Positions 1-18,048 of a stretch of 18,048 nt of DNA are shown here, in pieces (within the stretch, counting starts at the first letter, position 1; every line of letters begins with the position of its first letter). The stretch is taken from assembly GCA_000388065.2 (NCBI GenBank), contig KB932216.1; one strand, given 5' to 3'. This DNA comes from Fonticula alba ATCC 38817. Lineage: Eukaryota; Protista; Nucleariida. A program made the position numbers and the translations under genes. The notes beneath the pieces were generated by a model. It had not been told where the DNA came from. It saw nothing but the letters and a program-made list of their open reading frames with translations, and searched no databases.

Positions 1-1534
1 CCAGCGCCAGGAAGAAGTACTCCGGCGCATACCGGTACAGCATGCCGAACAGCACATCCGGCTGCTGGCCCATCTCCGCGGCCAGCTCCCGCACCGTGAA
101 GCGCATCCGCCGGCCGGACGGGTGCACCTGCCTCGCCAGCCGCCGCAGCCGCCGGATGTCCTCATCCGCCAGGGCGTACTTCAGGAATGTCGGTCGCGGA
201 TCCCAAAAGCCCTCGGGCCATCCGAAGGAGGACATCGCACTCATCAACGTTTTGAGGGGCATGCCCAAATACTCACACATTTCCCGTATTGACACGATGG
301 GCCGCAGCCCAGCCAGACCCCGGGTCTCGACTTCCAGGTCCCGACTCAACGTCAGCGCCAGCATCGGCACATTCGTCCCCGGACCGGACCCATGCACCTG
401 CGGGTCGAAGTATACCGGCCGATTGGCCGCCGATGGCCCGGCCGGCGCATGGCTCCCCTCGCCCGCCGGCGACCCTTCACCCGGGGGGGCCTGGTGCACC
501 GGCGAAGTGGCCGGCAAGAAGCGCCGCGTGTACTCGGCCAGCGTCAGCCGGGCCACACCCTCCGGCCGGGTGAGTTGCCACACCGGCCGTTCCTCGGAAT
601 AGGGTAATACCACCCCCGGCTCGTAGTAGCTGATGTACCAGCGGAGCTGATCGGCCAGTATCCCCAACTGCCTGCCCATGTCCCGGAGACTGTGCCGGCG
701 TTCTTGCAACAGCTCTCGCATGCGGGCCACCTTCTCCGCCGGCATCGGCCCCCGCAGGTGGACCATGTACTCCGGGCAGAGCTCCGGGCCGTGCCGGATG
801 ATCAAGCCATAAGACACACCGAACGACTTGCGGATCATCTCCAGCGAGGGCACCGGCAACATCTGCAGCCCTGCCACCAATGCGTCTCGCAGGACTTCGA
901 TCTTCGCGGCTGGAACATCGGACGCCATCACATCTCCATGCTCCGGGAAGTGCTTGTCGATGGCCTTCGACAAGGATGTCATGTCGCTCGAAAGGAGCAA
1001 CGCCATTACCCTCCTCGACAGGGGNNNNNNNNNNNNNNNNNNNNNNNNNNNNNNNNNNNNNNNNNNNNNNNNNNNNNNNNNNNNNNNNNNNNNNNNNNNN
1101 NNNNNNNNNNNNNNNNNNNNNNNNNNNNNNNNNNNNNNNNNNNCAAGCCGCAGGAACAGCCGGAAGTGCGCCACATCGTCGAACCCCTGCGGCAGGGGCT
1201 CCTCCCCGGCCTCGATGGCCCGGCAGAGCCGCGCCCCGGCGCACTCGGCGTCGTAATTCGCACACCCGGCGGACGTGGCCACCTTGGTGGTCGTGCTCCC
1301 GGCGGCCGAGGAGAATGCCCGCATATGGAGCAGCGACATGCCCCCGGGAGCCATGACCTGCGACGTTGTCGCATACACGCCGCTGACGGTGGCCAGGGGG
1401 GACGCCTGGCCCCGGTTGGCCGGTGTATGGCCCCCGGCCAGAGACCAGCCCCGTCGGGCCGCCGTCGCCGCCGTCGCCAATGCCGGCGAGCCCCACGCAC
1501 GCAGGGCTCGCACGGCCGTCCTTGAAGCCAACAT
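1..1534 (-). CDS. Putative mitochondria-targeted tandem HTH-repeat protein, paralog A (3'-truncated by window edge; contains assembly gap 1025-1143)
   Basis: Hand-translated stop-free minus frame from ATG at 1534: MLASRTAVRALRAWGSPALATAATAARRGWSL...RLCRAIEAGEEPLPQGFDDVAHFRLFLRL[gap]PLSRRVMALLLSSDMTSLSKAIDKHFPE...MPAEKVARMRELLQERRHSLRDMGRQLGILADQLRWYISYYEPGVVLP...QVHPSGRRMRFTVRELAAEMGQQPDVLFGMLYRYAPEYFFLAL>. Colinear with the 14322-16283 protein (26/43 identical in block 2-130 vs 14676-14804). Third codon positions are mostly G/C, and a pyrimidine tract lies directly upstream of the ATG. Confidence 0.88.
   Translation of the reverse strand, partial: MLASRTAVRALRAWGSPALATAATAARRGWSLAGGHTPANRGQASPLATVSGVYATTSQVMAPGGMSLLHMRAFSSAAGSTTTKVATSAGCANYDAECAGARLCRAIEAGEEPLPQGFDDVAHFRLFLRLXXXXXXXXXXXXXXXXXXXXXXXXXXXXXXXXXXXXXXXXPLSRRVMALLLSSDMTSLSKAIDKHFPEHGDVMASDVPAAKIEVLRDALVAGLQMLPVPSLEMIRKSFGVSYGLIIRHGPELCPEYMVHLRGPMPAEKVARMRELLQERRHSLRDMGRQLGILADQLRWYISYYEPGVVLPYSEERPVWQLTRPEGVARLTLAEYTRRFLPATSPVHQAPPGEGSPAGEGSHAPAGPSAANRPVYFDPQVHGSGPGTNVPMLALTLSRDLEVETRGLAGLRPIVSIREMCEYLGMPLKTLMSAMSSFGWPEGFWDPRPTFLKYALADEDIRRLRRLARQVHPSGRRMRFTVRELAAEMGQQPDVLFGMLYRYAPEYFFLAL
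1025..1143. other. Assembly gap (119 N) inside paralog A coding sequence
   Basis: Run of n from 1025 to 1143. Confidence 1.
1313..1534 (-). other. Predicted mitochondrial presequence of paralog A (aa 1-74)
   Basis: Rich in R/A/S/T/L with no D/E in the first 94 aa. It ends in M-R-A-F|S-S, matching the established R-3 (R-x-F/Y/L|S) MPP/Icp55 processing motif. Confidence 0.7.
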
Positions 1535-2514: not shown

Positions 2515-2547
<33 letters not shown>

Positions 2548-2585
2548 ACCAAGAACAAGACCGAGACCGAGATCGAGATCGAAAT

Positions 2586-2624
<39 letters not shown>

Positions 2625-2699
2625 AACCAAGACCAAGACCAAGACCAAGACCGAGACCGAGATCGAGATCGAGATCGAGATCGAGATCGAAATCGAAAT

Positions 2700-2766
<67 letters not shown>

Positions 2767-2808
2767 AAGGCCGAGATCGAGACCGAGACCAAGGCCGAGA
2801 TCGAGATC
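2515..2808. repeat. Degenerate hexamer tandem array, 49 units, consensus GAGACC
   Basis: Units GAGCCC x5, then GAGACC/GAGATC/GAAATC/GAAACC/AAGACC/AAGAAC/AAGGCC. The 6-bp phase is never broken over 294 bp. Confidence 0.95.
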
Positions 2809-3995
2809 GAGAGACAGGGCGTCTCGCCCGCGGGTACCGACCTCTCCGCGCGAGCAAAGGGCGCAGCGGCCGATGCGCCCTTGCGATCCGCGAAGTAGGT
2901 CCCCCCCCCCCCCCCGGCCCTCCGCCCCCTCCCCCTCCCCGGCGGAGATGGCCACAACCGAAAGGAGCACAGCCAGAGCAAGAGCGGGCGAGGGACAGAT
3001 CGGCCACCGGGGAGGCGATCGACGCTGGGGCCCGGCGCCGTGACGCGCGCGCGAGAAGGACCCAGGGCGCCCCGGAGCGCCGACCATAGCCGGCCAGCCC
3101 CGCCGCATGGCCATATGCACGCGCACGCGCACACGCGCGACAGGGGTGCGCCCAGTCACCACGGCCGGCGCGCATGGCATGCTGACCAGGAGGGGGCCTG
3201 GACTGGCCCGGCCGTCGGCTACGGGGCCGTGCGCATCGCCGCCGCCGCCGCCGCGGCCACGGCCAATGGCCAACGGCACACACATCCCGGCCGGGCGGCG
3301 CCTCGATCGGCCCCGGCCCCCAGGGGGCAACCTTCGACGGGCGGCCACGCAGCAAGCGAGCGAAAGAAAAGAAAAAGAAACACGGCTCCCCGGGGGGCGG
3401 GCCACTGTCCTGCCCACGCGCGTGGCATGGCAGAGCCAGCCATGGGCAAGAGACAGGGGCGCGGGCCCTGGCCGAGCAGGGGTGTGCGTCGCTCGCCGGA
3501 CGCGGCGGGGCACCCCCCGACCCGAGCACCGGGTCGCGAGGCGGGGCGAGAGCTGGGGGACTGACGCGCCCCGGTGCATGTGTGCCAGGCCGGTCAGCCG
3601 GCCGCCGCGGGTGGCAGACCCACCAGGAGGCCGCAGTCATGCGCGCACGCACATACACACACACAAACACAGGCCGAGGAGGCGCCCGGCCGACGGGTCC
3701 CTTCGGTGCGGCGGAGTCGCGGGCTCCCCCAGGGACACGTGTGCCAGCGCGCCGGCGCTTTGCCACCGTGGCTCGCCGCCACCCGTGCTCGCCCGCGCGC
3801 CGGCGGCGCAAGTGCCCTCCGCGAACCGCCCTCTGGCCAAGCCGTGCCCCGGCCACCGGCCCCCGCCCCCCTGCCCCCTCCCCTCCCCTGCCGCAACGCC
3901 AAGCAGCCAGCACAAAGGGCACACACCTGCCGGCAGCCCCGGGGCCCGGCATCGGGTCCCGACCGAGACGGGCGCGCGGGCCGAAGCAGGAGATC

Positions 3996-6110: not shown

Positions 6111-6781
6111 CGGCCGCCAGAGGCGCCGGCCAGTCGGCCGCGACACACCAGCGCGCACTCCCCCCCCCTCCCCGGCGAGACACATGCTGGAGCGCCTGGG
6201 GCTTGGGGGTGTCCTGGTGCCGGGGTCCTGTGCGCCCCGGGCGCTCCTGTGCAGCGCCCCCCGCCCCTGCTGTCCGGCTGGGCAGCATTCGGGCGTCAGG
6301 CGCCCCTTGCGCCCCGCCCCGCGCCCGCCCTCGCTGGTGGCATGCCCAGGAGCTGCACCATCCATGCCAAGCCCGAGCGCCCCCAGCGGGCAGCCGCCAA
6401 CGCCGGAACGGACCACAGCCCTGTGGCCGCATCCCGAGCCATGCACACCCGGCAGACGGCCACGCTCCCCGCGCGCAGGCCAGCGCCCCCGCCCGGCCTC
6501 GGCCCCGATCCGAGAAAAGCACCCCTCCCACGACCCGACCGGGCCATCTCGGACGAGGGACGCCCCGGGGTCCTATCGCCAGCCGGTCCCCCAGCAAAGG
6601 CTGGCCCTGCCGGAATGTGCGCCCTTCGCGGGCTGGCGTGTTCGCTCGCATGACCGCCCGCGTCGCAAAGCCCGGGTCCCGGCCCTAGCGCCACGCCGGC
6701 TGCCGTGACCGAGGCCTCCCCTGCCCGGCCCCGGCGAATTGTCCCCCCTCTGCCGACGCCCCCAGGCGAGGGGACGGCCGC

Positions 6782-6794
6782 AAAAAAAAAAAAA
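6782..6794. repeat. A13 homopolymer
   Basis: Read directly from the sequence; no target-site duplication seen. Confidence 0.9.
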
Positions 6795-7392
6795 CGCCCT
6801 CCGATCGCACACAGCCCCTGGGGTCTTGCTTTCCCGGCGCTCGTGGCATCTGGCAAGTGGCTCGCCCCTCCTCCCCGGCGCAATCGACCACGCGCTTGGG
6901 CGGGCCACCGGCGCCACGATGCGGCCCCGGGGCCGGGCCCGCTCACGCCTCGTCGCCATTGTGGCCCTCGCCACAGGCATGCCGCTCCCGAGGCAGACCG
7001 AGGCTTTTCCCCGCCCCGCCGCGGCTACCTGCCTCTGGCTCTCCCTCTTTCGCGCACACAGGCTCGGGGCCGGCCCCGAGAGCCCACGGCCCGCGGCCGG
7101 CCCGGCTGCCTCGGCAGGGCGTGACGGCCGGTGCTTCGGGAGCCTCGACCCGAGGGGGATCCCGGCGAATCGGGCCTCTCGCAGCGGCGCGGTCGGGCGG
7201 GCGCGTGCCTGCTCGCCGAGCCCCGGCGCCCGATCAAGCATCCATCTCGCCGCACCGCCCCAGGCACCATCGGTCGAGCAGGGGCATTGGCCCTCCGCTG
7301 GGGCGGCGGCGTGCGTGTGCGACCGCCTCGGGAGGCCCACCTCGCACCCCCCAGTAGCACGCCACACTTGAGCACCGGGCACACGCCTACGG

Positions 7393-7474
7393 CTCTCTCA
7401 CTCTCTCTCTCTCTCTCGCTCTCTCTCCCGGTCTCTCACTTTTGCGCTCTCGCTCCCGCTCTCTCTCTCTCTTT
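7393..7474. repeat. Imperfect (CT)n polypyrimidine tract
   Basis: Read directly from the sequence. Confidence 0.9.
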
Positions 7475-7964
7475 ATCCTGCACCCCGCCGTGCGCCTCCT
7501 CCGGTCCACATACACGCACATGCGTTTCGAGAGCCCGAGCCCCTGCCCACCCGGGCCACGCGGGTGCCCCTGTGTGGCGAAATGAAACACCCCGGGCCGG
7601 GGGAACCATGCCCGCCGCAGCGACCGCACGGGCATCGACATAACCATAGCCGGCAGCAGGGGGCATTCCATGCCGGTGTTGGGGCTGCGGCTGGGTTGCC
7701 GAGACGCGCCCGGGAAATGCCCACGCCCGCACGCCAGATTGCTCCCGAAAACATGGAACGCCGGCTCGAAACCCGAGCGTCGCCGGCGCGGCCGCCTGCA
7801 TGCCAGCCACCGGCCGCCGGATGCTGCCCACACCGGGGGCATGACCCGGCCGGGCACCGGCCCCGCCCCCCGCCCGGCCCCAAACACACCATCAGCCCGT
7901 GGAGCCGGCCCGACACGCAGCAGCACTGGCCCGGCAAACAACAAGGGTCGAAGCGAAACGGACC

Positions 7965-7989
7965 CACACACACACACACACACACACAC
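7965..7989. repeat. (CA)12 microsatellite
   Basis: Read directly from the sequence. Confidence 0.95.
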
Positions 7990-10900
7990 GGGCCAGCTGC
8001 CCGCGCATGCTCGCCCTACTTGCCGGGGAAGGTGCCCGGAGCGGCCACATCGCCCTCCGGTTGGCTGCGGCCCGGCGGCGCACCGGACGAACTTCACATG
8101 GCTCTTGTGGGCGCAGGAGCCATGGCTCACACACGGGCCTCGGTCACAAGGGGCGTGGTAAATCGGCGACCGCCCCAGCCCTCTCCCGGCTGGCCCGCCG
8201 CCAAGCGCCCGGCCCGCGGGTTGAGCGTGAGCATGCGCCCCCCCCCCCCCCCCCCCCCGTCCCTCCTCCTCCATCGGCCCAGCCTGCCACCGGGGGAGGC
8301 GGAAGATTGCCCGTCACATGCGATGCCGGATGCATTTTGCTGCCCGGCGATGGCGCCTCACTCGGGCACATTCACTGGGCCACTGGCATGGGTCGGCTGC
8401 AGCGGGGGTGCCCGATCAGACAGATCAATGGCCAGCACCCGATGTCGGGCCCGCCTTCCACGGGGCTCTCACCGGCCGGGCGCCCACCCAAAGGAAGCCC
8501 GGCCCCGGGGGACACCACTCCGAGAAAGGCGCCCCCGGCCGGGACCTTTCTCCTTGTGCCACCAGGCGGCCCGGCAGCCCGGCATCCGGGGAGCCGGCGG
8601 GCAAACAACCGCGAAGGGCTGCCCCTCCCTTCAAAGGGGGGCCCCCGTGGGTACCATCGAGCGGCTGCTCGCCAGCCCGACTGAAGCCTCGACCCGGCTC
8701 GCGCATGTGTTCCCCGGCAGCCGTGTGCTGGGGCCTTCGCCCGCGGCAGGCACGCCAGAGGGGGCGGGGGAGGGGGCGGACTTCCTTCGCCCGTCGAGTG
8801 CCATGGCACCCCCCGGCCCCGGCGGCCACAGGGCCGTCGTCGTCACGCGCGGGACGCCTCTCCAAGGGGAGCCATCCCCGAGGCGGCACACCGTCCCGCG
8901 GCTTGGGGCAGATCCTACCAGCGGCTCAGGCAGCAACTCGGCCCCCACATGCCCTCTCGGCCGGCCTCGCCGCCATGCGCCCCGGCTTCCCCTCCATTCA
9001 TCCACATCCCCGAGCACGCACGAAGGCATACACACACACAACCCGGCCTTGCCTCTTTCACATCCCCGACCGATGGACCCAGCCAAGGAGCAGTTCAGTC
9101 CCACCCACCGCTCGACGCCAAAACCCAGGCACCCCGGCACCACCGGCCCCGGTGCACCGAGCAGACCGCCGACATGCGGCCTGCGTGGCCCTGCCAGTGG
9201 CTGCCCACCTCCGAGCAGACCGGGCGGAACACCCGCATGATCGACCCCTTCTTCCGCGCGACCCGCAGAGCGCCCCCCCCCCCCCCCAGGACACACGGTT
9301 CCGAGGCCCCTGGGCACGCTTTTGCTGGGGCTCGCCGTGATGGCCGGCGGCGGATCTTCGCCTGGGCGAAGGGAGTTGGCTGCTTGCCGCGCCAGATGGC
9401 CTCGTGTTTGCTTCCCAGGACACAACCAAGATGACCCCCGCCATTCGCCCGCCCCTGGGCCCCCCTTCCGGGCAACATCCGCCGCGCGCCACATCCCAAC
9501 GGCGAGCGGTTCGATTAAATCCCACTGCCCCGGGTTAACCGGGCCGCCCTCCCATTCCGGATGCCGGGCGCCGTGCTGCGGCCCGCGCCGAGGCCCCGGC
9601 CTCTGGACTCGGTGCATGGATCCGCCGTCACATGCGCCATGTCGCCCGCATGACGCAGCATGATCGTGTCACGGCACGGGCCGCTCGCCGGCGGCCCCGT
9701 CGCCTTCCCGCCACAGCCATCGCTCCTCGGCCTCGGCCTCCTGCCGTCTCCTAGCCTCCTCCCAGTGGCGACCCCCCCCCCCTGCCGCGGCCTTCCGCCG
9801 GCGGGACTACAGCGGCCCCGTCGCCTGACGCAGGGGATGCCGAAAAAAGGATCGCCCCCTCACGGCCGACACATGGATCGGCACACAGGGCGGGCCCGGA
9901 GCCGTGGAGCCACCGAGGAAAAAGGCGGACCGCCTGCCGGGCGCCCCTCCCTCCGGCGCCTCTCCTGCCGCCGGGCCCACAGCGTCGGGCGGCCACCGCC
10001 AAACACACCGGCCAAAGCCCCGGGGAGGGGGCTCCGCACCGGCCCAGGGCGCAAGAGAGCATGCCGAGGCCAGCGTGCAGCCTATAACCATTAGCTGGGG
10101 CCACCTGCCGAAGGGAGCCAGCCGCCCCTTCGACGCTGCGCGGCGGTGCGGCACAGCTCTGTCCCCCCCCCCCCCCCCGCCCCGCCCCGCCCCGCCTCCT
10201 GAACAGGACCAGTCCACCTGCCGACAGGATGCGGCTGACACATCGCGCATCCACTCCGGCCACTTCGCACACCTGGCCATGCCACCGCAGGGGGCAGGCC
10301 AGCCAGAGCCCTGGCCAGGCCCCCGCCCCGGGAGGTGAGCGACTCGCGAGAAGGCGCAGCCGCGAGCGCTCGCCAAGCGACACACCAAGCGGCCCCGGCC
10401 ACCTGGGCACACCTCGACGCCCCAACAGCCCAGACCCTCGCCCTCCGTGAAGCAGGCCCCTGGCGCCGCGCAAGCTGCCAAGCAGGTGCCGGGGCAGGGG
10501 CGAGGGGACAGCCTTTCGCCCGCACCCCGGCAAACGCGTGTGCCCACGCTTCGGAGGGGACCGGCCCCAGCCAGAGCGACCGCAGCGACAGCCCCTCGCT
10601 CCCCCGGCGGCCGGCCGGCAGGCGAAGGAGGCGCAGGACGCCAAAAGGCCGGGCCCCGCCCCGTGCGTCGCCGCTGCCACCACATTATACTATTGCCGCG
10701 GCCGGGCGTACCAAGGCACACCAACACGGCCAGGGCACCTCGAGCGCGCATGCGGACGCCCGAAGGCCAGAGGCGAAGCGGGAGAAGGCCCGAAAGGTGG
10801 CGAGACGGCACATGCACCGGCAGAGGGGCAGGGCCCCGGGCCGCCCAAGCCGCGAGTCACCCCGACCCCCACGCCCTCCCCCCAGGGCCAGACTGCGGCC

Positions 10901-13900
10901 CGGCGGCCACCGGGGAAATGGCCGCCACGGAGGGGCGCCCCGGCTGGCGCACGGCCGAATGGCCGCGCGGCCGTCACCCGGAGCCGGAGGCCCCCCCCCC
11001 TGGCCGGCGCACCCTGGCCCGACCACGGCCGACCCCAGGCCGCCGGGGGGGGCTGGCGGTCGGGCAGGCGCGCCCGGCCCCCTCCCCCCCGGCGAGCAGG
11101 GCCGCCAATCGCTCCAGCCGCCCCGGGACTGCCCTGCAGGGGGCACATCACAGCGAGAGGGGCATGAGGCGGGGGGGGGGGGGGCATGTACCCCGCGCGC
11201 CGCGCTCTCTCCCGCGGTGCATGCCGGCCCGCCTGCACACAAGGCCGGGGGAAGTCCCGCGCCCAGGACCGCCCCCCCACCCCCCCGGCCCGCGGCGTCT
11301 CTTCCATGCATGGCCCGCACGCTGGCGCATTGTGCCCGGTCCCGGCCGCCACCAGCCGCGCCGCCTCGGCCGCCGGGGCCCGAGCCAGGGTCGCCCCACC
11401 GGGCGGCAACACGCACCCCGGCACATGGGCCCCAGCGCGCGACGGCACCCGACCCCGGGACCGGTCCGTGCCTCCGGCCCCGGAGAAGAGGCCGCAAACG
11501 CATGGTGCCCGGCCTGCTCGCTGCCCGGGCACACCCTGCGCGATCTTGGCCACCCGCCCCGGCCTCCGCGCGAGGCGCTTGCCCGGCGCGTCGGGCCTCG
11601 CCATGTCCGCCTCGGCGGCTCCGTCGCCACCGGCCCCGGTCGCACCTGCCCGCCACACCTCGCAGCCGGCCTTGGCGGTTCGCACCGCGACTGCGCCTCC
11701 CCCCTGGCCCCTTTCCCCCGGGGGGGGGGGGGGGGGAGCATGCCTGTCTCTGCGCCTTGCCCTGGGTCGGCGCCCCGGACCGTCGGCGCCTGGCCCCGGC
11801 CGTCCCCTCCGCGCCCGGTCCGCCGCACACACCCAAGCACACGTGGATGCTGCCACCTCGGCGCCCATGAGCCAGCCAAGGCGGAGGGGGGCGGGGCGAA
11901 CAAGCGCACGATGCCCGGCTGCTGGCTCGTGCCTGGGGCCCGGCACCGGTGGCCGCGCTGGCCAGGGCGCGCCCCAGCCGGGGACCGAGCCATGGGCCCG
12001 CGAGCCGGTCCACATGCCCCGCCCGCCTGCCGCACAGCCGGCTCGACCGGCGCCGCCATGCCCGCACCAGGGGGGGCCACGAATGGGTTGCCCGCGGGCG
12101 CACCCCCTCACTCGGCCACCCGCCCCTCCTCCCGTCGGAGCACCACCGACACAGTGCCTGCCGAGGAAGCACGCGCCAACCCCGCCCCGCTGCCGGCCAC
12201 CATGGCAAGGCCCGGTAGCCCGGCCCCCGGGTGAGGAGGGGCCCCGGCCCCGGTCGCCGCATGCCAGCCGCGCACATCGGCCAAGACAGCGGCACCCGGC
12301 GCACGCCGGCCCGGCCGGCCGCCATACCCCCCGAGCCCGGGCCCCGCACACGCCACCAGGCGTCCCGATCCCCGGAGCAGGGCCCCCGGATGGACCCTTC
12401 GCCGCGGCCTGGCCGGCGCCCCGGCAGGGCATGTGCGAGTCCGCCGCCAGGCACCTCGCGGTCGCCCGCCGCACGGTGCGCTGGCTGTCCCGGGGCGCCG
12501 GCCCCAGCCGGCCCGAAGAGGCCCCGTCGCAAAAAGCAAAAACACCGCCCGCTTGGCCCGTGCCACGGCCCCCCGAGGGACACCTCGCCGCCGCCGCCGC
12601 CGCCGCCGTCGAGGCTGCCCCCGGAGCCGGGTCGCCGGGTCTAACAACATTGCCTCGGAAGTGCCGGCGAAGACGCGGCGAGGGGATCCGCCATGCGACG
12701 CGGGCCCGGGCAGCCTGACACACAGGCACCGGTCGCGCGGCCGGGCGGCGCCCGGAGCATGGGCCCGGCCCCTCCCTCGCCCGGCCCGATCGACCCGGCA
12801 AAGATGCCCGAGCAGCCGGGGCCGCCCAAGCATGTCGCACCGCCCGGCGCCGGCCCCCGGCCAACCCATGCCCCCCACGGCGGTAGCATGTCGCCAGCGC
12901 ACGGGCATCTGGCCAGGAGGGCCGCATCGGCCCGGGCCCGCGAGCGCCATGCCTTCGGCGCGCCCCCGGCCCAACACCTGCCCCACGGCTTGGGGACAGG
13001 CCCGCGGGCGCGCTGGCCGGGCGTCGTCGTCCGGCACCGACCACGCAGCAGGGGCCGCTGCACCATCGGCATGGCCCGGCAATGAGAGCCGCCGGCGCCA
13101 AGCCCCCGGCGCCAGGCTGGCGACCGACACGCAGGCATGCCAAAGCGCGATCCCCGCACAGGCGTGGGCCCCCGGCCGCATGCGCGCACGCGCCTCTCCG
13201 GAAGCGAAGGCCCGAGTGGCTTCCACGCTGGCATAGCGGCCCCGGCATCGGAGCAGCCATCCCGGCTGCCGGGGGTGAATGGGCCACCACAAGCCCGGCG
13301 CGGCCAGGACCTCGGCAGCGGGCCACACGAGGCGCGCCCCTGCGCCCGGTGTGCCGGTGGCCGCCTGCCGCCCGCCCGGCCAGCCGGGGAGGGCCGCCCA
13401 CGCCATCGCCAGCATGTGCGCTGCTCCGGGCAGCCCCGGCGACCTTGGCGCACACCGCCGGCACCGGGCCGGGGGCGGGCGCTCGGCGGCCGTCTGGGCC
13501 GGTGAGGCATGCGCAGCCGGCCGCCATCGCATGCCCGGCATGCGCACCCGGCGACTGGCCATCACGAGCCCCCCTGTCCTGGAGTCGCCAGGCGTGCACG
13601 CCCGATGGCCCGTCGAAGGTCGGCGCATGGCCGGGCCCGGGATGTGGGTGTGCGGTTGCCGGAGGCCGCTCCAGCGCCGGGGACGCCGACCGGGCAGAGG
13701 CGGGCGCCTGTGCTGGCCCGCCCGGCTACTGGCCCGCCCGGCTGCTGGTCCGGTCGCCACGCCCCCCCCCCCCCCGGATGCCCATCGGGACTGATGCACA
13801 GCATCGCACGCCGGCCCAGGCACACAGGGCGGCCATTTGCCGGCGGGTCGGCCACCCGGGGAGAAAGCTCAAAAAGGGGGAAACCGTGTCCGGGCGAGGG

Positions 13901-14321
13901 ACAAGGGGAACACGACACCGCAAGTGCCAGGGACACGCACGCAGGGTGGCCAGTCGCCGGATGATCGGCCACCCCGGCTCGGGAGAAATGGACCACCCCC
14001 AGAAAGGGAGCACCCGAGACAGCATCGTCGTCGCGGAAGGGGAGATGAAAATGGAGAACTCAAGCGAAAATGGCGATGAAAATGAAAACAAAAAATACAA
14101 CACATAATGAAGATCAAGGACAACACACGGCGGTGCATTTTGCCCGTGCGGGGACACACAGCGAGGCAACAGGGGGCATAGTAAAATACAGTCGGCAGGC
14201 ACACGGCACGGCCGGGGAGAGAAGGATGCACACCCGTGGCGCCATGTGTGCCCGCACAGACACACAAGAGAAAGAGGCCGCAGGCGCCTGGTACACCACA
14301 CGCACACACACGCACACACCA

Positions 14322-16283
14322 TCACCGGCTCGCCGCCGCGAGATAGGGCTGGGCAAGCTTCAGCAGGTTCTCCTCCCAGCCATACTGCCGGGCGATGGCG
14401 GAGGCCGGCATCTGCGGATGCAGCCGCAGGAGGGACTTGATTTCGAACAGCCGGCTGGCCACATGCCGGTAGTAGGACGGCGCCCGGAAGGGCACCTTTC
14501 GGCAGGTCGCATCCGCCCGGAGGGAGTTCACCACCTGCGGCAGGGTGCAGCCCAGGTCCACGGCCACCTGGTGCAGCAGCGGGGCCGTGGCCTGGTCGGC
14601 GACCTTCGCCAGCAGCGGGGCCACCTTTTCCACGGGCACATACATGCCCCCGGGCCCGGACCCCGCCTCCGGGGCCAGGGCCAGGAAGAAGTACTCCGGA
14701 CAGTAGAGGTGCAGCAGGGAGAACACCATGTCCGGGCACATGGCCAGCTGCTCGGCAATCTGCCTCACGGTGAAGCGCATCCGCCCGCCGGCCGGGTGCA
14801 CCTGCTCGCCGAGCTGGCGCAATCGCTCGATCTCCGAAAAGGACAGGGCGCCCACCGCCGGGACCGTCCGGCGCAGCTCCGCCAGCGACCCGGCCCCGAC
14901 GAAACGCTTCCGCACCTGGTACAGCGAGATGCCCATCCGGTCGGACACATCGCGCAGGGTCAACGGCGGCCGCAGGCTCCCGAGCCCCTGCAACATCGGC
15001 AGCATGTCCCGGTCCGCATCCACATGGCCCGGCCGCCGGATGAGCCCCAAGTGCCGCAGGGTGATCAGGCTCTTCGGGTCCACGGCCGGCTCCGGGCAAA
15101 GGAGCGCCCGATACAGGGGAGACACCGGCGGCAGGAATGCCCGCACATAGTCCCTCAGGGTCATCGAGTTGGAGCCGGGCCCGGACCGGCCGTCCAGCTC
15201 CAGCGGCCGCGGCACCGACCGGTCGGCCGGCACCGGCAGCACCATCCCCGGCTCATAGTACTTGATGTACCACCGGATCCGGTCCAGCGGGATGCCCGTC
15301 CGGCTGGCCAGCTCGGCCAGCGTCCACCGGCACTCCTGCAGCAGGGCCCGCAGGTGGGCCAGCCGCTCGGCCGGCAGCTCGCCCCACCGGCGGACCCCAT
15401 ACGTGGCATGCAGCAGGGGCCCATGGCAGTCGAAGGTGGCCCGGTCGACGCCGGCCCGCTGGCACACCGTCTCCTCCGACAGGCTGGCGTCGCTGCCGGC
15501 CGGCCCGGCGGCGGCCAGCACCGCTCGCAGGGCGTCCAAGCGCACCGACGGCACCCGCGGCGGCTGGTAGTCCCCCAACTCCGGCACATAGGTGGCCAGG
15601 TCCCTCGCCACGGACTTCGGCGAGGAGGACAGCAGCCAGGCCATCTGCGACAGGGTCAGCCGGGGGGTCACCGATGCCAGGGCCCGGAGCCGGTCGACCG
15701 GCACATGCGGCCGCCGGGCCGCCGGGCCACACGCCTCCGGCAGGTACTCCAGCAGCAGGGACCCCAGCTCCCGCGAGGGGAGCCACACCAGCCGCGGCAG
15801 CAGGTCCCCCAAAACCGGCGGATCCCGCCGGACCAGCCTCGACACATCCTCGAACACCGGATGCCCGGGGCCCAGCCCGGCCAGCGGGCCGCGCCTGGAT
15901 CGCCGCCCCGGCGGGCTCCCCACGCCCAGAGACCCATAGTGCATCATCAGCGCCTTCACCGACAGCCGGTCCAGCCCCAGCAGCCGGCCAATGGTGCAGA
16001 TCGGCGCCAGCGGCCGCCGCACTTGCGGGTCGCCAAGCAGACGCAGAAACAGCTGGAAGTCCTCGATGGTGCTGAACCCCAGTGGCAAGCCCTGCCCATC
16101 GGCCTCGATGTGCCGGCGGCGCTCCGCCCCGGGGGTCGGCTGGTCGGGCCGGCATCGGCCCATGGTCTGCGCCTGGGCGGCCGGCGGTATCGAGGACAGC
16201 CCGGCCCCCCGACACCCGGCGCCGGGAGCGAAGGCCGCCTGCGCCAGGCGCCGGTGTGGGAGGCGCCGGATCGCGCGGAACAT
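14322..16283 (-). CDS. Putative mitochondria-targeted tandem HTH-repeat protein, paralog B (653 aa, intronless)
   Basis: Part of the 14322-16496 ORF. The start is placed at MFRAIRRLPHRRLAQAAFA (16283) because 16284-16496 is a pyrimidine/poly-C leader. It has normal globular amino-acid composition and ~93% GC3 in a hand count of ~345 codons. HTH-like segments include WTLAELASRTGIPLDRIRWYI, LTLRDVSDRMGISLYQVRKRF, FTVRQIAEQLAMCPDMVFSLL, LTLSQMAWLLSSSPKSVARDL and MPASAIARQYGWEENLLK. Homologous to paralog A along its length. Confidence 0.9.
   Translation of the reverse strand: MFRAIRRLPHRRLAQAAFAPGAGCRGAGLSSIPPAAQAQTMGRCRPDQPTPGAERRRHIEADGQGLPLGFSTIEDFQLFLRLLGDPQVRRPLAPICTIGRLLGLDRLSVKALMMHYGSLGVGSPPGRRSRRGPLAGLGPGHPVFEDVSRLVRRDPPVLGDLLPRLVWLPSRELGSLLLEYLPEACGPAARRPHVPVDRLRALASVTPRLTLSQMAWLLSSSPKSVARDLATYVPELGDYQPPRVPSVRLDALRAVLAAAGPAGSDASLSEETVCQRAGVDRATFDCHGPLLHATYGVRRWGELPAERLAHLRALLQECRWTLAELASRTGIPLDRIRWYIKYYEPGMVLPVPADRSVPRPLELDGRSGPGSNSMTLRDYVRAFLPPVSPLYRALLCPEPAVDPKSLITLRHLGLIRRPGHVDADRDMLPMLQGLGSLRPPLTLRDVSDRMGISLYQVRKRFVGAGSLAELRRTVPAVGALSFSEIERLRQLGEQVHPAGGRMRFTVRQIAEQLAMCPDMVFSLLHLYCPEYFFLALAPEAGSGPGGMYVPVEKVAPLLAKVADQATAPLLHQVAVDLGCTLPQVVNSLRADATCRKVPFRAPSYYRHVASRLFEIKSLLRLHPQMPASAIARQYGWEENLLKLAQPYLAAASR
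16194..16283 (-). other. Predicted mitochondrial presequence of paralog B (about aa 1-30)
   Basis: MFRAIRRLPHRRLAQAAFAPGAGCRGAGLSS is Arg-rich and amphipathic-looking, with no acidic residue before D47. Confidence 0.65.
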
Positions 16284-16984
16284 CGCGAAGGGAGAGGAGC
16301 GGGCGGCGGGCGGCGGAGGAGGGCGGAAAGGAAGGGAGGGGGCAAAGTGGAAAAGGGCCAAGACTAGGGGGGAGGGGGGGGGGGGGGGAGGACGATGCCG
16401 TCGTCGTCCGGGGCGCACGCACGCCGCCGGGGCCGCCGAAAAAGATGGAAAGAGCGGCCGACGCCCCCCCCCGGGACCGAGGCGGCGCAGGCACATGCGC
16501 GAGCGATTGCCAACGCATCGCTTCTCGGGTCACCTGCGCCGGCGTTCGGCACGTGGTCCAGGGGCCCGTGAATGCGCGCGTCGCCCGGCTCCCCTCGCGC
16601 CGGCCCGGGCCGCCGGGGGTGTGCCTGGTTGACGCCGACCACGATGCGGGCAATTGCCGGCCCCGGCCGGCGTGGATGTGTTCTTTCATTGGCTCCGGTC
16701 CAGGGCGGCGGCCGGGCCACTGGCGCATGCCTGCGGCCTGGTCCCCACACGGGTGTGGGGGCGTGCCTCTCGCCCGTCGTCGGCGCCGCACGCGCGGCCG
16801 GCGCTCTGGACAGCACTGGCCAGGTCGCTGGGTCGTGCGCGAGGCAGGCCGCCCCCCGGGCCCGGCGATCGCCGCCCCTTCGGTGGCCAGAGCCAGGCCG
16901 GCCTTCCTCGCGTGCCCGAGCATGACCGGCGGAGCCGACTCCCGGGCGTGCCGCGGCATCCGGCCTGGCTGAGGTGGTGCGTAT

Positions 16985-17274
16985 GCCGCGGATCCTGCCA
17001 CTCTGGCCGTGAAGCAGGTGGCCGTGGATCCTGCCACGTTGGCCGTGAAACAAGTGGCCGCGGAGTTTACCACGTTGGTCGTGAAGCAGCTGGCCGTGGG
17101 TCCTGCCACTCTGGCCGTGAAGCAAGCGACCAGAGGATCTCGCCGCGCCACCCCCGAGACAAGCGGCCGCGGCGTTTACCACGTTGGCCGTGAAGCAAGC
17201 GACCAGTGGATCTCGCCGCGCCACCCCCGAGACAAGCAGCCGCGGATCTGGCCGCACCGGCCAGGAGACGTGCC
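16985..17274. repeat. 36-bp degenerate minisatellite (8 units) containing a 73-bp higher-order duplication
   Basis: Units start at 16985, 17021, 17057, 17093, 17129 (37 bp), 17166, 17202 (37 bp) and 17239. The core is GCCGYGGATCCTGCCACKYTGGCCGTGAARCARGTG. 17112-17164 matches 17185-17237 with 1 mismatch in 53 bp. Confidence 0.9.
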
Positions 17275-17583
17275 CCCAGTCGGAATGCCGACCTCGGCCA
17301 TCCATGCCGAGGGCGCTGCTCGCGGGAATGCGCCGGGGGGCGTGGCCGCGCGCCCGCCGCAGCTAGGCCCCCAAGCCGACGGCAGGCCCCGCCCTCCGCC
17401 CTCCGCCATGCCGCGCAGGCCGGCCCCGGAGAGGGGCGCTTCCTGCGGGGGCACCCGCGAGCGCGCCGCGAAGCCCCACCCCCAACACCCAACGCACGCC
17501 CCCCCCCCCGATCGGCGGCCCAACAAACAAACACCCATGAGCGCCAACTCGGTGTCCGGCGCCGAGACGCGCCCAGGGCCGAC

Positions 17584-17604
17584 AACAACAACAACAACAA
17601 CAAC
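17584..17604. repeat. (AAC)7 microsatellite
   Basis: Read directly from the sequence. Confidence 0.95.
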
Positions 17605-18048
17605 CGCGTGTCCGCAGGCCACCGCTCTCAGGCTCCGTCGGCTGGTGGCCTGGCGCGGGGCGACCGACTCAAGTGTTGGCTTTCTCCCCGGGCCTCTCAC
17701 GGCCCCCCTGAAACACGGCCCTCGCGTCTGGGCCATGTTCGATGGCGAATGCCCGGCCCCAGCCGCAGCCCGCCCGGCGGGCCCGCACGTTCCGGTGGTG
17801 TCGCGGAATAAATGCCCGATCCGCGGCGCGGACACGCGCATTCCCGCGCCTCTCGGCCATGGCGTACACACACACAGCATCGCACAAACGCCCGACCGCA
17901 CGATCGCGCGCGCGCAAGGCGCACGGACAGTCACCTTACGCCCCCCCCGCCCCCGGGCTCCAACGCGGGCCACCCGCCGGCCGAGCATGGCCAGGCCGGC
18001 AGAAGTGGCCCCGGCCCGTCGACAGCCGGCACGCTGGCCCACAACACC

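What the first reader, a model, noticed from the sequence alone, without database searches (positions are those of the whole stretch)
14322..16283. Unrecognised mitochondria-targeted protein built from ~8-9 tandem HTH-like modules
Seen: after an Arg-rich acid-free N-terminus, the 653-aa protein parses into ~45-50-aa modules at about aa 73-117, 143-183, 194-235, 244-295, 303-346, 424-462, 480-531, 549-590 and 608-647. Each has a leading helix ([VL]P-x2-3-[RK][LV]..LR.L, e.g. VPVDRLRAL, LPAERLAHLRALL, VPVEKVAPLL), then T/S-L-x-x-[IMLV]-A-x-x-[LMT]-G-[IM], then a third helix. Established: this three-helix pattern is that of tri-helical HTH DNA-binding domains (Xre/HTH_3, AsnC/Lrp, sigma-70 region 4, Tc1/CENP-B types). 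It differs in length and pattern from PPR (35 aa), OPR (38 aa) and mTERF (~30 aa) organellar repeats. Inference: a modular sequence-reading mtDNA or mtRNA-binding family (nucleoid, transcription or RNA-processing factor) that could be a functional analogue of PPR proteins in this lineage. I do not recognise it as any named family.
Basis: partly seen in the sequence, partly recalled or inferred. Interest (0 to 1): 0.85.

Follow-up and report, generated by a model that had tools for sequence, protein, structure and literature searches.

The report
Fonticula-only tandem helix-turn-helix array protein
An expressed, intronless gene of the amoeba Fonticula alba encodes a basic protein made of nine or ten classic DNA-binding helix-turn-helix modules behind a leader that looks like a mitochondrial import signal; it belongs to a family of at least 14 genes found only in this species and may be a new kind of organellar nucleic-acid reader, but its location and targets are untested.

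Summary
Window 14322-16283 (minus strand) is a real, unspliced, transcribed gene of Fonticula alba (scaffold KB932216.1) for a 653-aa protein with pI 10.

AlphaFold2 gives ten consecutive three-helix units. Nine carry the canonical HTH core. Support comes from four tests:
- Pfam hits, in this protein and its relatives, are exclusively HTH families.
- Profile-profile comparison relates modules 1-7 to each other far above column-shuffled controls.
- All 50 best PDB matches by VIA-align are HTH or winged-HTH domains.
- The HTH core motif occurs 6 times against 0.3 expected.

An exhaustive search of 1.84 billion representative proteins found only 13 relatives, all F. alba hypothetical proteins. 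A further copy sits at window 1-1534, broken by an assembly gap and the scaffold end.

The mitochondrial leader is a family trait: 8 of 10 N-termini are acid-free and basic, against 3 of 23 neighbouring genes. Import itself is unproven, and nucleic-acid binding, DNA versus RNA, and PPR-like modular reading remain inference.

The scan had already noted this family on other DNA of the same genome; follow-up s1-065373 reached the same reading.

Verdict: a new variant of a known kind (HTH array).

The parts
14322..16283 (-). Coding sequence (653 aa plus stop) of the HTH-array protein, identical to database protein P0001
   Evidence: GC3 0.92
14119..16369 (-). Extent of colinear, unspliced RNA contigs (about 200-nt 3' UTR and at least 86-nt 5' leader). 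The contigs break at a poly-C/G run near 16370-16390, so the true 5' end may lie further upstream.
   Evidence: with silent flanks
16146..16283 (-). Presequence-like leader, aa 1-46: Arg-rich, acid-free, predicted disordered
15930..16067 (-). HTH module 1 (aa 73-118), highly conserved among paralogs
15744..15860 (-). HTH module 2 (aa 142-180), ends in a YLPE cap
15588..15698 (-). HTH module 3 (aa 196-232), ends in a YVPE cap. Best structural match is the mariner/SETMAR transposase HTH.
15411..15548 (-). HTH module 4 (aa 246-291)
15255..15371 (-). HTH module 5 (aa 305-343), with Pfam HTH_23, HTH_24 and Sigma70_r4 sub-threshold hits
15051..15158 (-).
14895..15017 (-). HTH module 7 (aa 423-463), with Sigma70_r4 and FaeA hits. 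Its third helix is the most variable among paralogs.
14703..14840 (-). HTH module 8 (aa 482-527), highly conserved
14634..14702 (-). Near-invariant family linker (CPEYFFLA...PEAGSGPGGMYVP, aa 528-550)
14499..14633 (-). HTH module 9 (aa 551-595), the most conserved module. Best winged-HTH structural matches reach Z 6.9 (rmsd 1.8 A).
14328..14462 (-). HTH module 10 (aa 608-652), with Lrp/AsnC-type structural matches
16494..16496 (-). Alternative in-frame upstream ATG (would give 724 aa). The extra 71 aa are also Arg/Pro-rich and acid-free. Its use is undecided.
1..1534 (-). Second family member, 49% identical to paralog P0003. It is interrupted by an assembly gap (N run 1025-1143) and cut by the scaffold start inside the conserved PEYFFLA segment. 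Its leader is acid-free for about 95 aa.

Best explanation
The locus is a functional, intronless, expressed nuclear gene of Fonticula alba. It encodes a basic protein (pI 10) made almost entirely of nine canonical tri-helical helix-turn-helix modules plus one degenerate unit, arranged head to tail behind a 30-60-aa leader of mitochondrial-presequence type. It is one of at least 14 paralogs restricted to this species.

The most likely mechanism is as follows. The precursor is imported into the mitochondrial matrix. The mature array lays its HTH modules along an extended stretch of mitochondrial nucleic acid (DNA slightly favoured over RNA). The modules that are nearly constant among paralogs (1, 8, 9, and the invariant CPEYFFLA...GGMYVP linker) provide a shared function, such as docking to a common partner. 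The variable modules (2-7 and 10) give each paralog its own target.

Shown: the gene, its expression, the HTH-array architecture, the species-restricted family, and the leader as a family trait.

Inferred: import, nucleic-acid binding, and paralog-specific targets.
For: - Gene and transcript.
- HTH identity: P0001 hits only HTH families (HTH_32 at 3e-6, Sigma70_r4 at 2e-5 and 24.4 bits against a cutoff of 24.1, HTH_23, HTH_24).
- Across the 14 members, all 15 families hit are HTH families. HTH_23 is hit in 6 members, best E 9.4e-9.
- AF2 gives ten three-helix units. The fragment aa 190-350 reaches pLDDT 88.3.
- All 50 best VIA-align PDB matches of the whole model are HTH or winged-HTH DNA/RNA-binding domains, with Z 5-6.9 and rmsd 1.6-3 A over 41-59 aa for single-module matches. 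The fragment's matches are likewise almost all HTH-type domains, led by SETMAR/Mos1, Reb1 and c-Myb, GcrA and resolvase HTH.
- AFDB Foldseek places multi-HTH proteins directly after the paralogs.
- Internal repeat relation sits above controls. The HTH core motif is enriched 20-fold.
- Family range: 13 relatives in 1.84 billion representatives, all F. alba.
- Leader: 8 of 10 family N-termini are acid-free with at least 4 basic residues in the first 30 aa (7 of them), against 3 of 23 neighbouring genes and 4% of internal windows.
- Basic pI of 9-10.6 in all long members.
- Conserved versus variable modules.
Against: - There is no localisation predictor or experiment. The leader test is heuristic and the control sample is small.
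- Individual modules fall below Pfam's curated cut-offs. Structural Z scores of 5-7 are in the tool's 'middling' range. Foldseek PDB E-values are not significant.
- Several third ('recognition') helices are hydrophobic and poor in basic or polar residues (modules 2, 8, 10).
- pTM 0.57 and 0.67 suggest fixed packing, which would also fit a protein scaffold.
- The family sits preferentially near scaffold ends and is intronless. Its best single-module matches are transposase HTHs, which would also fit a nuclear, transposon-derived DNA binder.
- No orthologs exist to support a conserved housekeeping role.
Confidence: 0.45

Rival explanations
1. It is a nuclear DNA-binding protein family, such as lineage-specific transcription or chromatin factors. 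It may derive from the DNA-binding part of Tc1/mariner-type transposases. On this reading the N-terminal leader is not an import signal.
For: - The best single-module structural matches are SETMAR/Hsmar1 and Mos1 transposase HTH (28% and 21% identity), then Reb1, GcrA, DosR, Tn3 resolvase and c-Myb, with Tc3 lower down.
- AFDB neighbours include 'Mos1 transposase HTH domain-containing' multi-HTH proteins.
- The genes are intronless, species-restricted, sometimes in tandem, and 5 of 8 loci lie within 45 kb of a scaffold end.
Against: - The acid-free basic leader is conserved as a property, not as sequence, in 8 of 10 members against 3 of 23 neighbours. A nuclear factor has no reason to keep it.
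- There is no DDE or other catalytic domain in any member.
- No repeat termini were found around the gene (window only).
Confidence: 0.2
2. It is a mitochondrial helical scaffold or assembly factor. The HTH-like modules pack into a rigid superstructure and mediate protein-protein contacts, for example in the mitoribosome or a respiratory complex, rather than reading nucleic acid.
For: - pTM 0.57 for 653 aa, about 90 of them disordered, and 0.67 for a three-module fragment.
- TM 0.57-0.60 to the AFDB model of a 38%-identical paralog over 650 residues.
- Hydrophobic third helices in modules 2, 8 and 10, and strongest conservation in modules 1, 8 and 9.
- A recurrent [HY]xPE cap after helix 3: 24 occurrences against 1.4 expected. 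This looks like a packing element.
Against: - pI 9-10.6 throughout the family.
- Canonical HTH core with Gly/Ala at the turn in nine modules.
- No significant match to any solenoid or toroid: Foldseek E 0.3, TM 0.07-0.1.
- Both AF2 models rest on the same shallow family alignment, so their agreement is not independent.
Confidence: 0.15
3. It is not a gene: a chance long ORF in very GC-rich DNA.
For: ORFs of 300-900 codons occur in all six frames of this window, including a 765-codon antisense ORF over the same DNA.
Against: - RNA coverage is confined to the gene.
- GC3 is 0.92 in this frame only.
- There are 13 protein-level paralogs down to E 1e-117.
- The fold is confident.
Confidence: 0.01

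Closest known systems
Homeodomain-like / simple tri-helical HTH domains of Tc1/mariner transposases (Mos1, SETMAR, Tc3), Myb repeats and serine-recombinase HTH
   Same: Single modules superpose at rmsd 1.6-2.5 A over 40-47 residues with up to 28% identity. Pfam HTH_23, HTH_32 and HTH_28 (homeodomain-like) are the commonest hits.
   Different: Those proteins have one to three HTH units joined to a catalytic or other domain. Here nine to ten units fill the whole protein, there is no DDE or recombinase domain, and a presequence-like leader is present.
PPR, OPR, HPR and mTERF organellar helical-repeat proteins
   Same: They are nuclear-encoded multigene families of basic, all-helical tandem-repeat proteins with organellar leaders, and some paralog clusters evolve rapidly.
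   Different: Those repeats are 30-38-aa helical hairpins forming a continuous solenoid that binds single-stranded RNA (mTERF: DNA). Here the units are 47-71 aa apart, have three helices with the classical HTH turn, and no Pfam hit to any of those families appears at E<=10. Papers that speak of mitochondrial 'HTH repeats' (FASTK review PMC12687428; mtTF1 preprint 10.1101/2025.05.22.655275) apparently mean helical repeats of the solenoid kind: the review says so explicitly, the preprint only names them.
SelB C-terminal domain (four tandem winged-helix domains binding SECIS RNA)
   Same: It is a tandem array of HTH-type domains that reads an RNA. It appears among the top Foldseek and VIA matches.
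   Different: The match is not significant (E 0.2-0.4, Z 5.3). SelB has four winged domains attached to a GTPase, and there is no sequence relation.
Uncharacterised bacterial, phage and fungal multi-HTH proteins (AFDB clusters such as A0A4U1CKX9 and A0A137PA50; homing-endonuclease-associated HTH arrays)
   Same: They are long runs of HTH units in one chain. Foldseek aligns 500-600 residues at E 1e-5 to 1e-3. The ESM Atlas neighbours are of the same kind.
   Different: TM is only 0.1-0.17 and there is no detectable sequence homology. None is known to be organellar, and their functions are also unknown.

Membership tests
Helix-turn-helix superfamily (Pfam clan HTH; tri-helical / homeodomain-like / winged) | Sequence match to curated HTH profiles | tested here: met
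   In P0001, Sigma70_r4 scores 24.4 bits against a cutoff of 24.1, while HTH_32 and HTH_23 fall just below their cutoffs. Across the family all 15 Pfam families hit are HTH families, with HTH_23 in 6 of 14 members at best E 9.4e-9. Single modules alone are sub-threshold.
Helix-turn-helix superfamily (Pfam clan HTH; tri-helical / homeodomain-like / winged) | Three-helix unit with a short (3-4 residue) turn between helix 2 (7-8 aa) and helix 3 (10-15 aa) | tested here: met
   AF2 DSSP shows nine units with exactly this geometry. The tenth unit (aa 376-411) has a 7-residue loop.
Helix-turn-helix superfamily (Pfam clan HTH; tri-helical / homeodomain-like / winged) | Canonical core pattern: hydrophobic at positions 4, 8, 10 and 15; small residue at 5; Gly/Ala/Ser at 9 | tested here: met
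   There are 6 strict matches in P0001 against 0.31 in shuffles (0 of 2000 reach 6). Eight paralogs have 2-8 matches.
Helix-turn-helix superfamily (Pfam clan HTH; tri-helical / homeodomain-like / winged) | Superposition on solved HTH domains | tested here: inconclusive
   All 50 top VIA matches of the whole model, and nearly all of the fragment's, are HTH or winged-HTH domains, with rmsd 1.6-3 A for single-module matches. However, Z is 4.5-6.9, which is within the tool's 'middling' range, and Foldseek PDB E-values exceed 0.1.
Helix-turn-helix superfamily (Pfam clan HTH; tri-helical / homeodomain-like / winged) | Binds nucleic acid through helix 3 | not testable with these tools
   Only indirect evidence is available: pI 9-10.6. 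Some third helices are hydrophobic.
PPR / mTERF organellar repeat families | Match to PPR or mTERF profiles; 30-35-aa two-helix repeat | tested here: not met
   No such Pfam hit appears even at E<=10. The repeat spacing is 47-71 aa with three helices per unit.
Tc1/mariner transposase | DDE/D catalytic domain after the bipartite HTH | tested here: not met
   No transposase catalytic family is hit in any of the 14 members. The chain is filled by HTH units.
Mitochondrial matrix precursor (N-terminal presequence) | Acid-free, Arg-rich, hydroxylated N-terminal 20-60 aa, poorly conserved in sequence | tested here: met
   In P0001 the first acidic residue is at position 47 and there are 6 basic residues in the first 30 aa. 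The trait holds in 8 of 10 family N-termini, against 3 of 23 neighbour genes and 4% of internal windows. Residues 1-46 have pLDDT below 50.
Mitochondrial matrix precursor (N-terminal presequence) | Actual import and cleavage | not testable with these tools
   No predictor (TargetP, MitoFates) or proteome is available here.

The most novel reading that the evidence does not exclude
The family, together with the other poly-HTH genes the scan has noted in this genome, is a new class of organellar nucleic-acid-binding repeat proteins. It would consist of mitochondrion-imported arrays of classical HTH domains in which each paralog reads its own extended site on mitochondrial DNA or RNA. In this lineage they would take the gene-specific roles that PPR, OPR or HPR proteins play elsewhere.
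Probability: 0.3. Interest if true: 0.85.

Novelty: new variant of a known kind. Interest (0 to 1): 0.62.

Why it matters
Every known expanded family of organellar gene-expression factors (PPR, OPR, HPR, mTERF, PUF-like) is an alpha-solenoid of helical hairpins. A mitochondrial family built from classical HTH DNA-binding domains would be an independent solution to the same problem. It would show that modular organellar readers can be assembled from a quite different domain.

It could also offer a new programmable scaffold, and it would say something about mitochondrial gene expression in nucleariids, the sister lineage of Fungi, where almost nothing is known.

Even on the conservative reading, it documents an undescribed, expressed, species-restricted family of at least 14 genes with an unusual architecture of nine to ten HTH units per chain.

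Tried and rejected
- The word-indexed homolog search returned only the query itself, both with the single protein and with the family alignment, because low-complexity words saturate the candidate list. The exhaustive phmmer search was needed.
- BLASTP self-comparison found no internal repeats. The modules are too diverged, and only profile-profile comparison relates them.
- A PDB sequence search with the family profile gave nothing below E 0.16.
- Foldseek against PDB and Swiss-Prot models gave no significant whole-chain match.
- The ESM Atlas fold search returned only generic HTH clusters.
- Literature searches found no description of this family or of tri-helical HTH arrays in mitochondria.
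- Helix 3 is not globally more variable than helices 1 and 2 (entropy 1.63 against 1.51 and 1.56). A simple 'hypervariable recognition helix' signature is therefore not seen; the variability is by module instead.
- I first read the 33-nt high-depth unitig at 14670-14702 as summed paralog expression. The 33-mer is not identical in the fetched paralogs (1-6 mismatches). It shows only that a near-identical paralogous transcript is present.
- No terminal repeats or direct repeats flank the gene within the window.
Full report
**Origin and gene.** The window is the first 18,048 nt of Fonticula alba scaffold KB932216.1 (assembly GCA_000388065.2), and window coordinates equal record coordinates. All relatives are F. 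alba proteins.

In DNA of 65-80% GC, long ORFs occur in every frame, including a 765-codon antisense ORF over the same DNA. ORF length alone therefore means nothing here. Three results show that this frame is the gene:
- GC at codon positions is 0.74/0.52/0.92, while the antisense ORF has the mirror pattern.
- It has protein-level paralogs down to E 4e-117.
- Four small 2012 runs, which behave as RNA assemblies, carry colinear gap-free contigs over 14119-16369. In the same runs 12491-14018, 16884-18000 and the whole of 6300-12290 are essentially uncovered.

The gene is thus transcribed and unspliced. Contigs break at a poly-C/G run near 16370-16390, and weak coverage continues to about 16880. 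An in-frame ATG at 16496 (724 aa) therefore cannot be excluded as the start. The extra 71 residues would also be Arg/Pro-rich and acid-free.

**The modules.** AlphaFold2 on the 14-member family alignment gives mean pLDDT 72.5 and pTM 0.57. Residues 1-46 are disordered. Ten consecutive three-helix units follow, at aa 73-118, 142-180, 196-232, 246-291, 305-343, 376-411, 423-463, 482-527, 551-595 and 608-652. The unit at 376-411 is additional and degenerate: it has a 7-residue loop, no HTH core and no Pfam hit.

A fragment model of aa 190-350 reaches pLDDT 88.3 and pTM 0.67, with three clean units.

The units are HTH domains by several independent criteria:
- The only Pfam hits of the protein are HTH families: HTH_32, Sigma70_r4 (just above its cutoff), HTH_23, HTH_24, FaeA and others.
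- Over the 14 members, all 15 families hit are HTH families. HTH_23 is hit in six members, best E 9.4e-9.
- The classical core (hydrophobic 4/8/10/15, small 5, Gly/Ala/Ser 9) occurs six times against 0.31 expected, and no shuffle of 2000 reaches six. Paralogs have two to eight.
- All 50 best matches of an unbiased VIA-align scan of 48,161 PDB chains are HTH or winged-HTH nucleic-acid-binding domains. They include the BirA N-domain, ScpB, PurR, Lrp/AsnC, SpoIIID, NtrC1, SelB, SETMAR, GcrA and Sin. Z is 5-6.9, and the single-module matches superpose at rmsd 1.6-3 A over 41-59 residues. The matches fall on five different modules.
- The fragment matches SETMAR and Mos1 transposase HTH best (Z 6.3 and 6.1, 28% and 21% identity), then Reb1, GcrA, DosR, Tn3 resolvase and c-Myb, with Tc3 further down.

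The Z scores are in the range the tool calls middling, and Foldseek E-values against PDB are not significant. The structural evidence rests on the uniformity of the hit class, not on any single score.

**Are the modules related to each other?** BLASTP self-comparison finds nothing. Profile-profile comparison of module sub-alignments gives nine of 36 pairs at 87% probability or more, in register: 1-2, 2-3, 3-5, 3-6, 4-5, 4-6, 4-7, 5-6 and 5-7. Fifty-three column-shuffled controls reach at most 8.8%.

A family-specific cap, [HY]-x-P-E directly after helix 3, recurs 24 times in nine members against 1.4 expected.

**The family.** An exhaustive phmmer search of 1.84 billion representative proteins finds 13 relatives and nothing else at E<=0.001. 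The ten that were looked up are all single-member clusters: nine are named as F. alba hypothetical proteins, and the tenth is the unnamed fragment from this same scaffold.

One further copy lies at window 1-1534 on the minus strand. It is 49% identical to P0003, is interrupted by an N gap at 1025-1143, and is cut by the scaffold start inside the conserved PEYFFLA segment.

Tandem pairs occur. Five of eight loci lie within 45 kb of a scaffold end.

Among paralogs, units 1, 8 and 9 of the ten, and the linker CPEYFFLA...GGMYVP, are nearly constant. Units 2-7 and 10 vary, most of all helix 3 of units 3 and 7.

All long members are basic, with pI 9.1-10.6.

**The leader.** The first 30 residues of P0001 hold six basic and no acidic residues, and the first acidic residue is at position 47. 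This is not merely GC-driven composition:
- Only 4% of internal 30-aa windows of the family are acid-free.
- Eight of ten N-terminally complete members, including the window-edge copy, have an acid-free first 30 residues, and seven of them also hold at least four basic residues.
- Only 3 of 23 neighbouring genes have this property, and one of those three is an obvious signal peptide.

The leaders are not alignable in sequence, as expected of presequences. I put mitochondrial import at about 70%. No predictor or experiment was available.

**What it most likely does.** The safest statement is that this is an imported, basic, multi-HTH nucleic-acid-binding protein. The division into constant and variable modules suggests a shared docking function plus paralog-specific target choice. 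HTH domains favour duplex DNA. However, tandem winged-helix arrays can read RNA (SelB), and organellar paralog families are usually RNA-directed, so I do not decide between them.

Several points argue against simple modular reading:
- Helix 3 is not globally more variable than helices 1 and 2.
- Several third helices are hydrophobic.
- The pTM values suggest a packed arrangement rather than free beads.

A nuclear, transposase-derived DNA binder is the other serious rival. It is supported by the transposase-type module matches, the lack of introns and the positions near scaffold ends, but it does not explain the conserved leader.

**Comparison with what is known.** No Pfam, PDB or literature entry describes this family. 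Where papers speak of mitochondrial 'HTH repeats' (FASTK, trypanosome mtTF1), they apparently mean solenoid-type helical repeats rather than the tri-helical DNA-binding domain; the FASTK review is explicit on this, the mtTF1 preprint is not. Long HTH arrays exist in uncharacterised bacterial, phage and fungal proteins, so the architecture as such is not unprecedented.

The scan had already met this family on other DNA of the same genome. Follow-up s1-065373 describes a Fonticula-only tandem-HTH family with import-like leaders, and many first-reader notes point to further poly-HTH genes. My results were obtained independently on this locus and agree. An unchecked note (s1-065381) proposes a multipartite mitochondrial genome. 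If that is true it would be an obvious place to look for targets, but I did not test it.

**Verdict.** This is a new variant of a known kind.

Noticed in passing
window 1-1534 (-): A second family member is broken by an assembly gap (N run 1025-1143) and by the scaffold start, which falls inside the conserved PEYFFLA segment. This suggests the assembly broke on paralogous sequence. Its leader has no acidic residue for about 95 aa.
   Followed up: yes
window 6300-14018: About 8 kb of 72-80% GC DNA has no called gene, no Pfam hit in its long ORFs and essentially no RNA contig coverage. It lies between the asparaginase gene and the HTH-array gene.
   Followed up: partly
scaffolds KB932206, 208, 210, 214, 215, 216 (loci L001, L003-L007): Family members lie preferentially near scaffold ends: 0, 6, 9-13, 14, 40 and 42 kb from an end, with another at 72 kb. 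Neighbours often include large cysteine-rich VSP/Furin-like/GF_recep_IV proteins. The family may be subtelomeric and fast-evolving.
   Followed up: partly
window 14670-14702: A 33-nt unitig with one mismatch, at 3-6 times the depth of the gene's own contigs, maps on the CPEYFFLALAP codons. This indicates a more highly expressed paralog with near-identical DNA here. The closest fetched paralog (L005) differs by 1 nt.
   Followed up: partly
window 16370-16496: A long poly-C/CT tract lies in the 5' leader, and an in-frame upstream ATG at 16496 would add 71 Arg/Pro-rich residues.
   Followed up: partly
window 2515-2812: A hexanucleotide microsatellite (GAGACC, about 50 copies, 90% match) lies inside a long minus-strand ORF.
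   Followed up: no
window 16985-17280: Tandem repeats of 36 nt (nested 73 and 109 nt periods) lie upstream of the gene, in untranscribed DNA.
   Followed up: no
L007 about 14800 (scaffold KB932214.1): The conserved CPEYFFLA codons (4 mismatches) lie about 100 nt beyond the annotated end of the 'partial' paralog P0010. That gene model is probably truncated.
   Followed up: no
L002 7465-9561 (scaffold KB932217.1): A tandem copy directly upstream of paralog P0002 is annotated as two genes (252 and 369 aa). It is either a frameshifted or decayed copy, or a split gene model.
   Followed up: no
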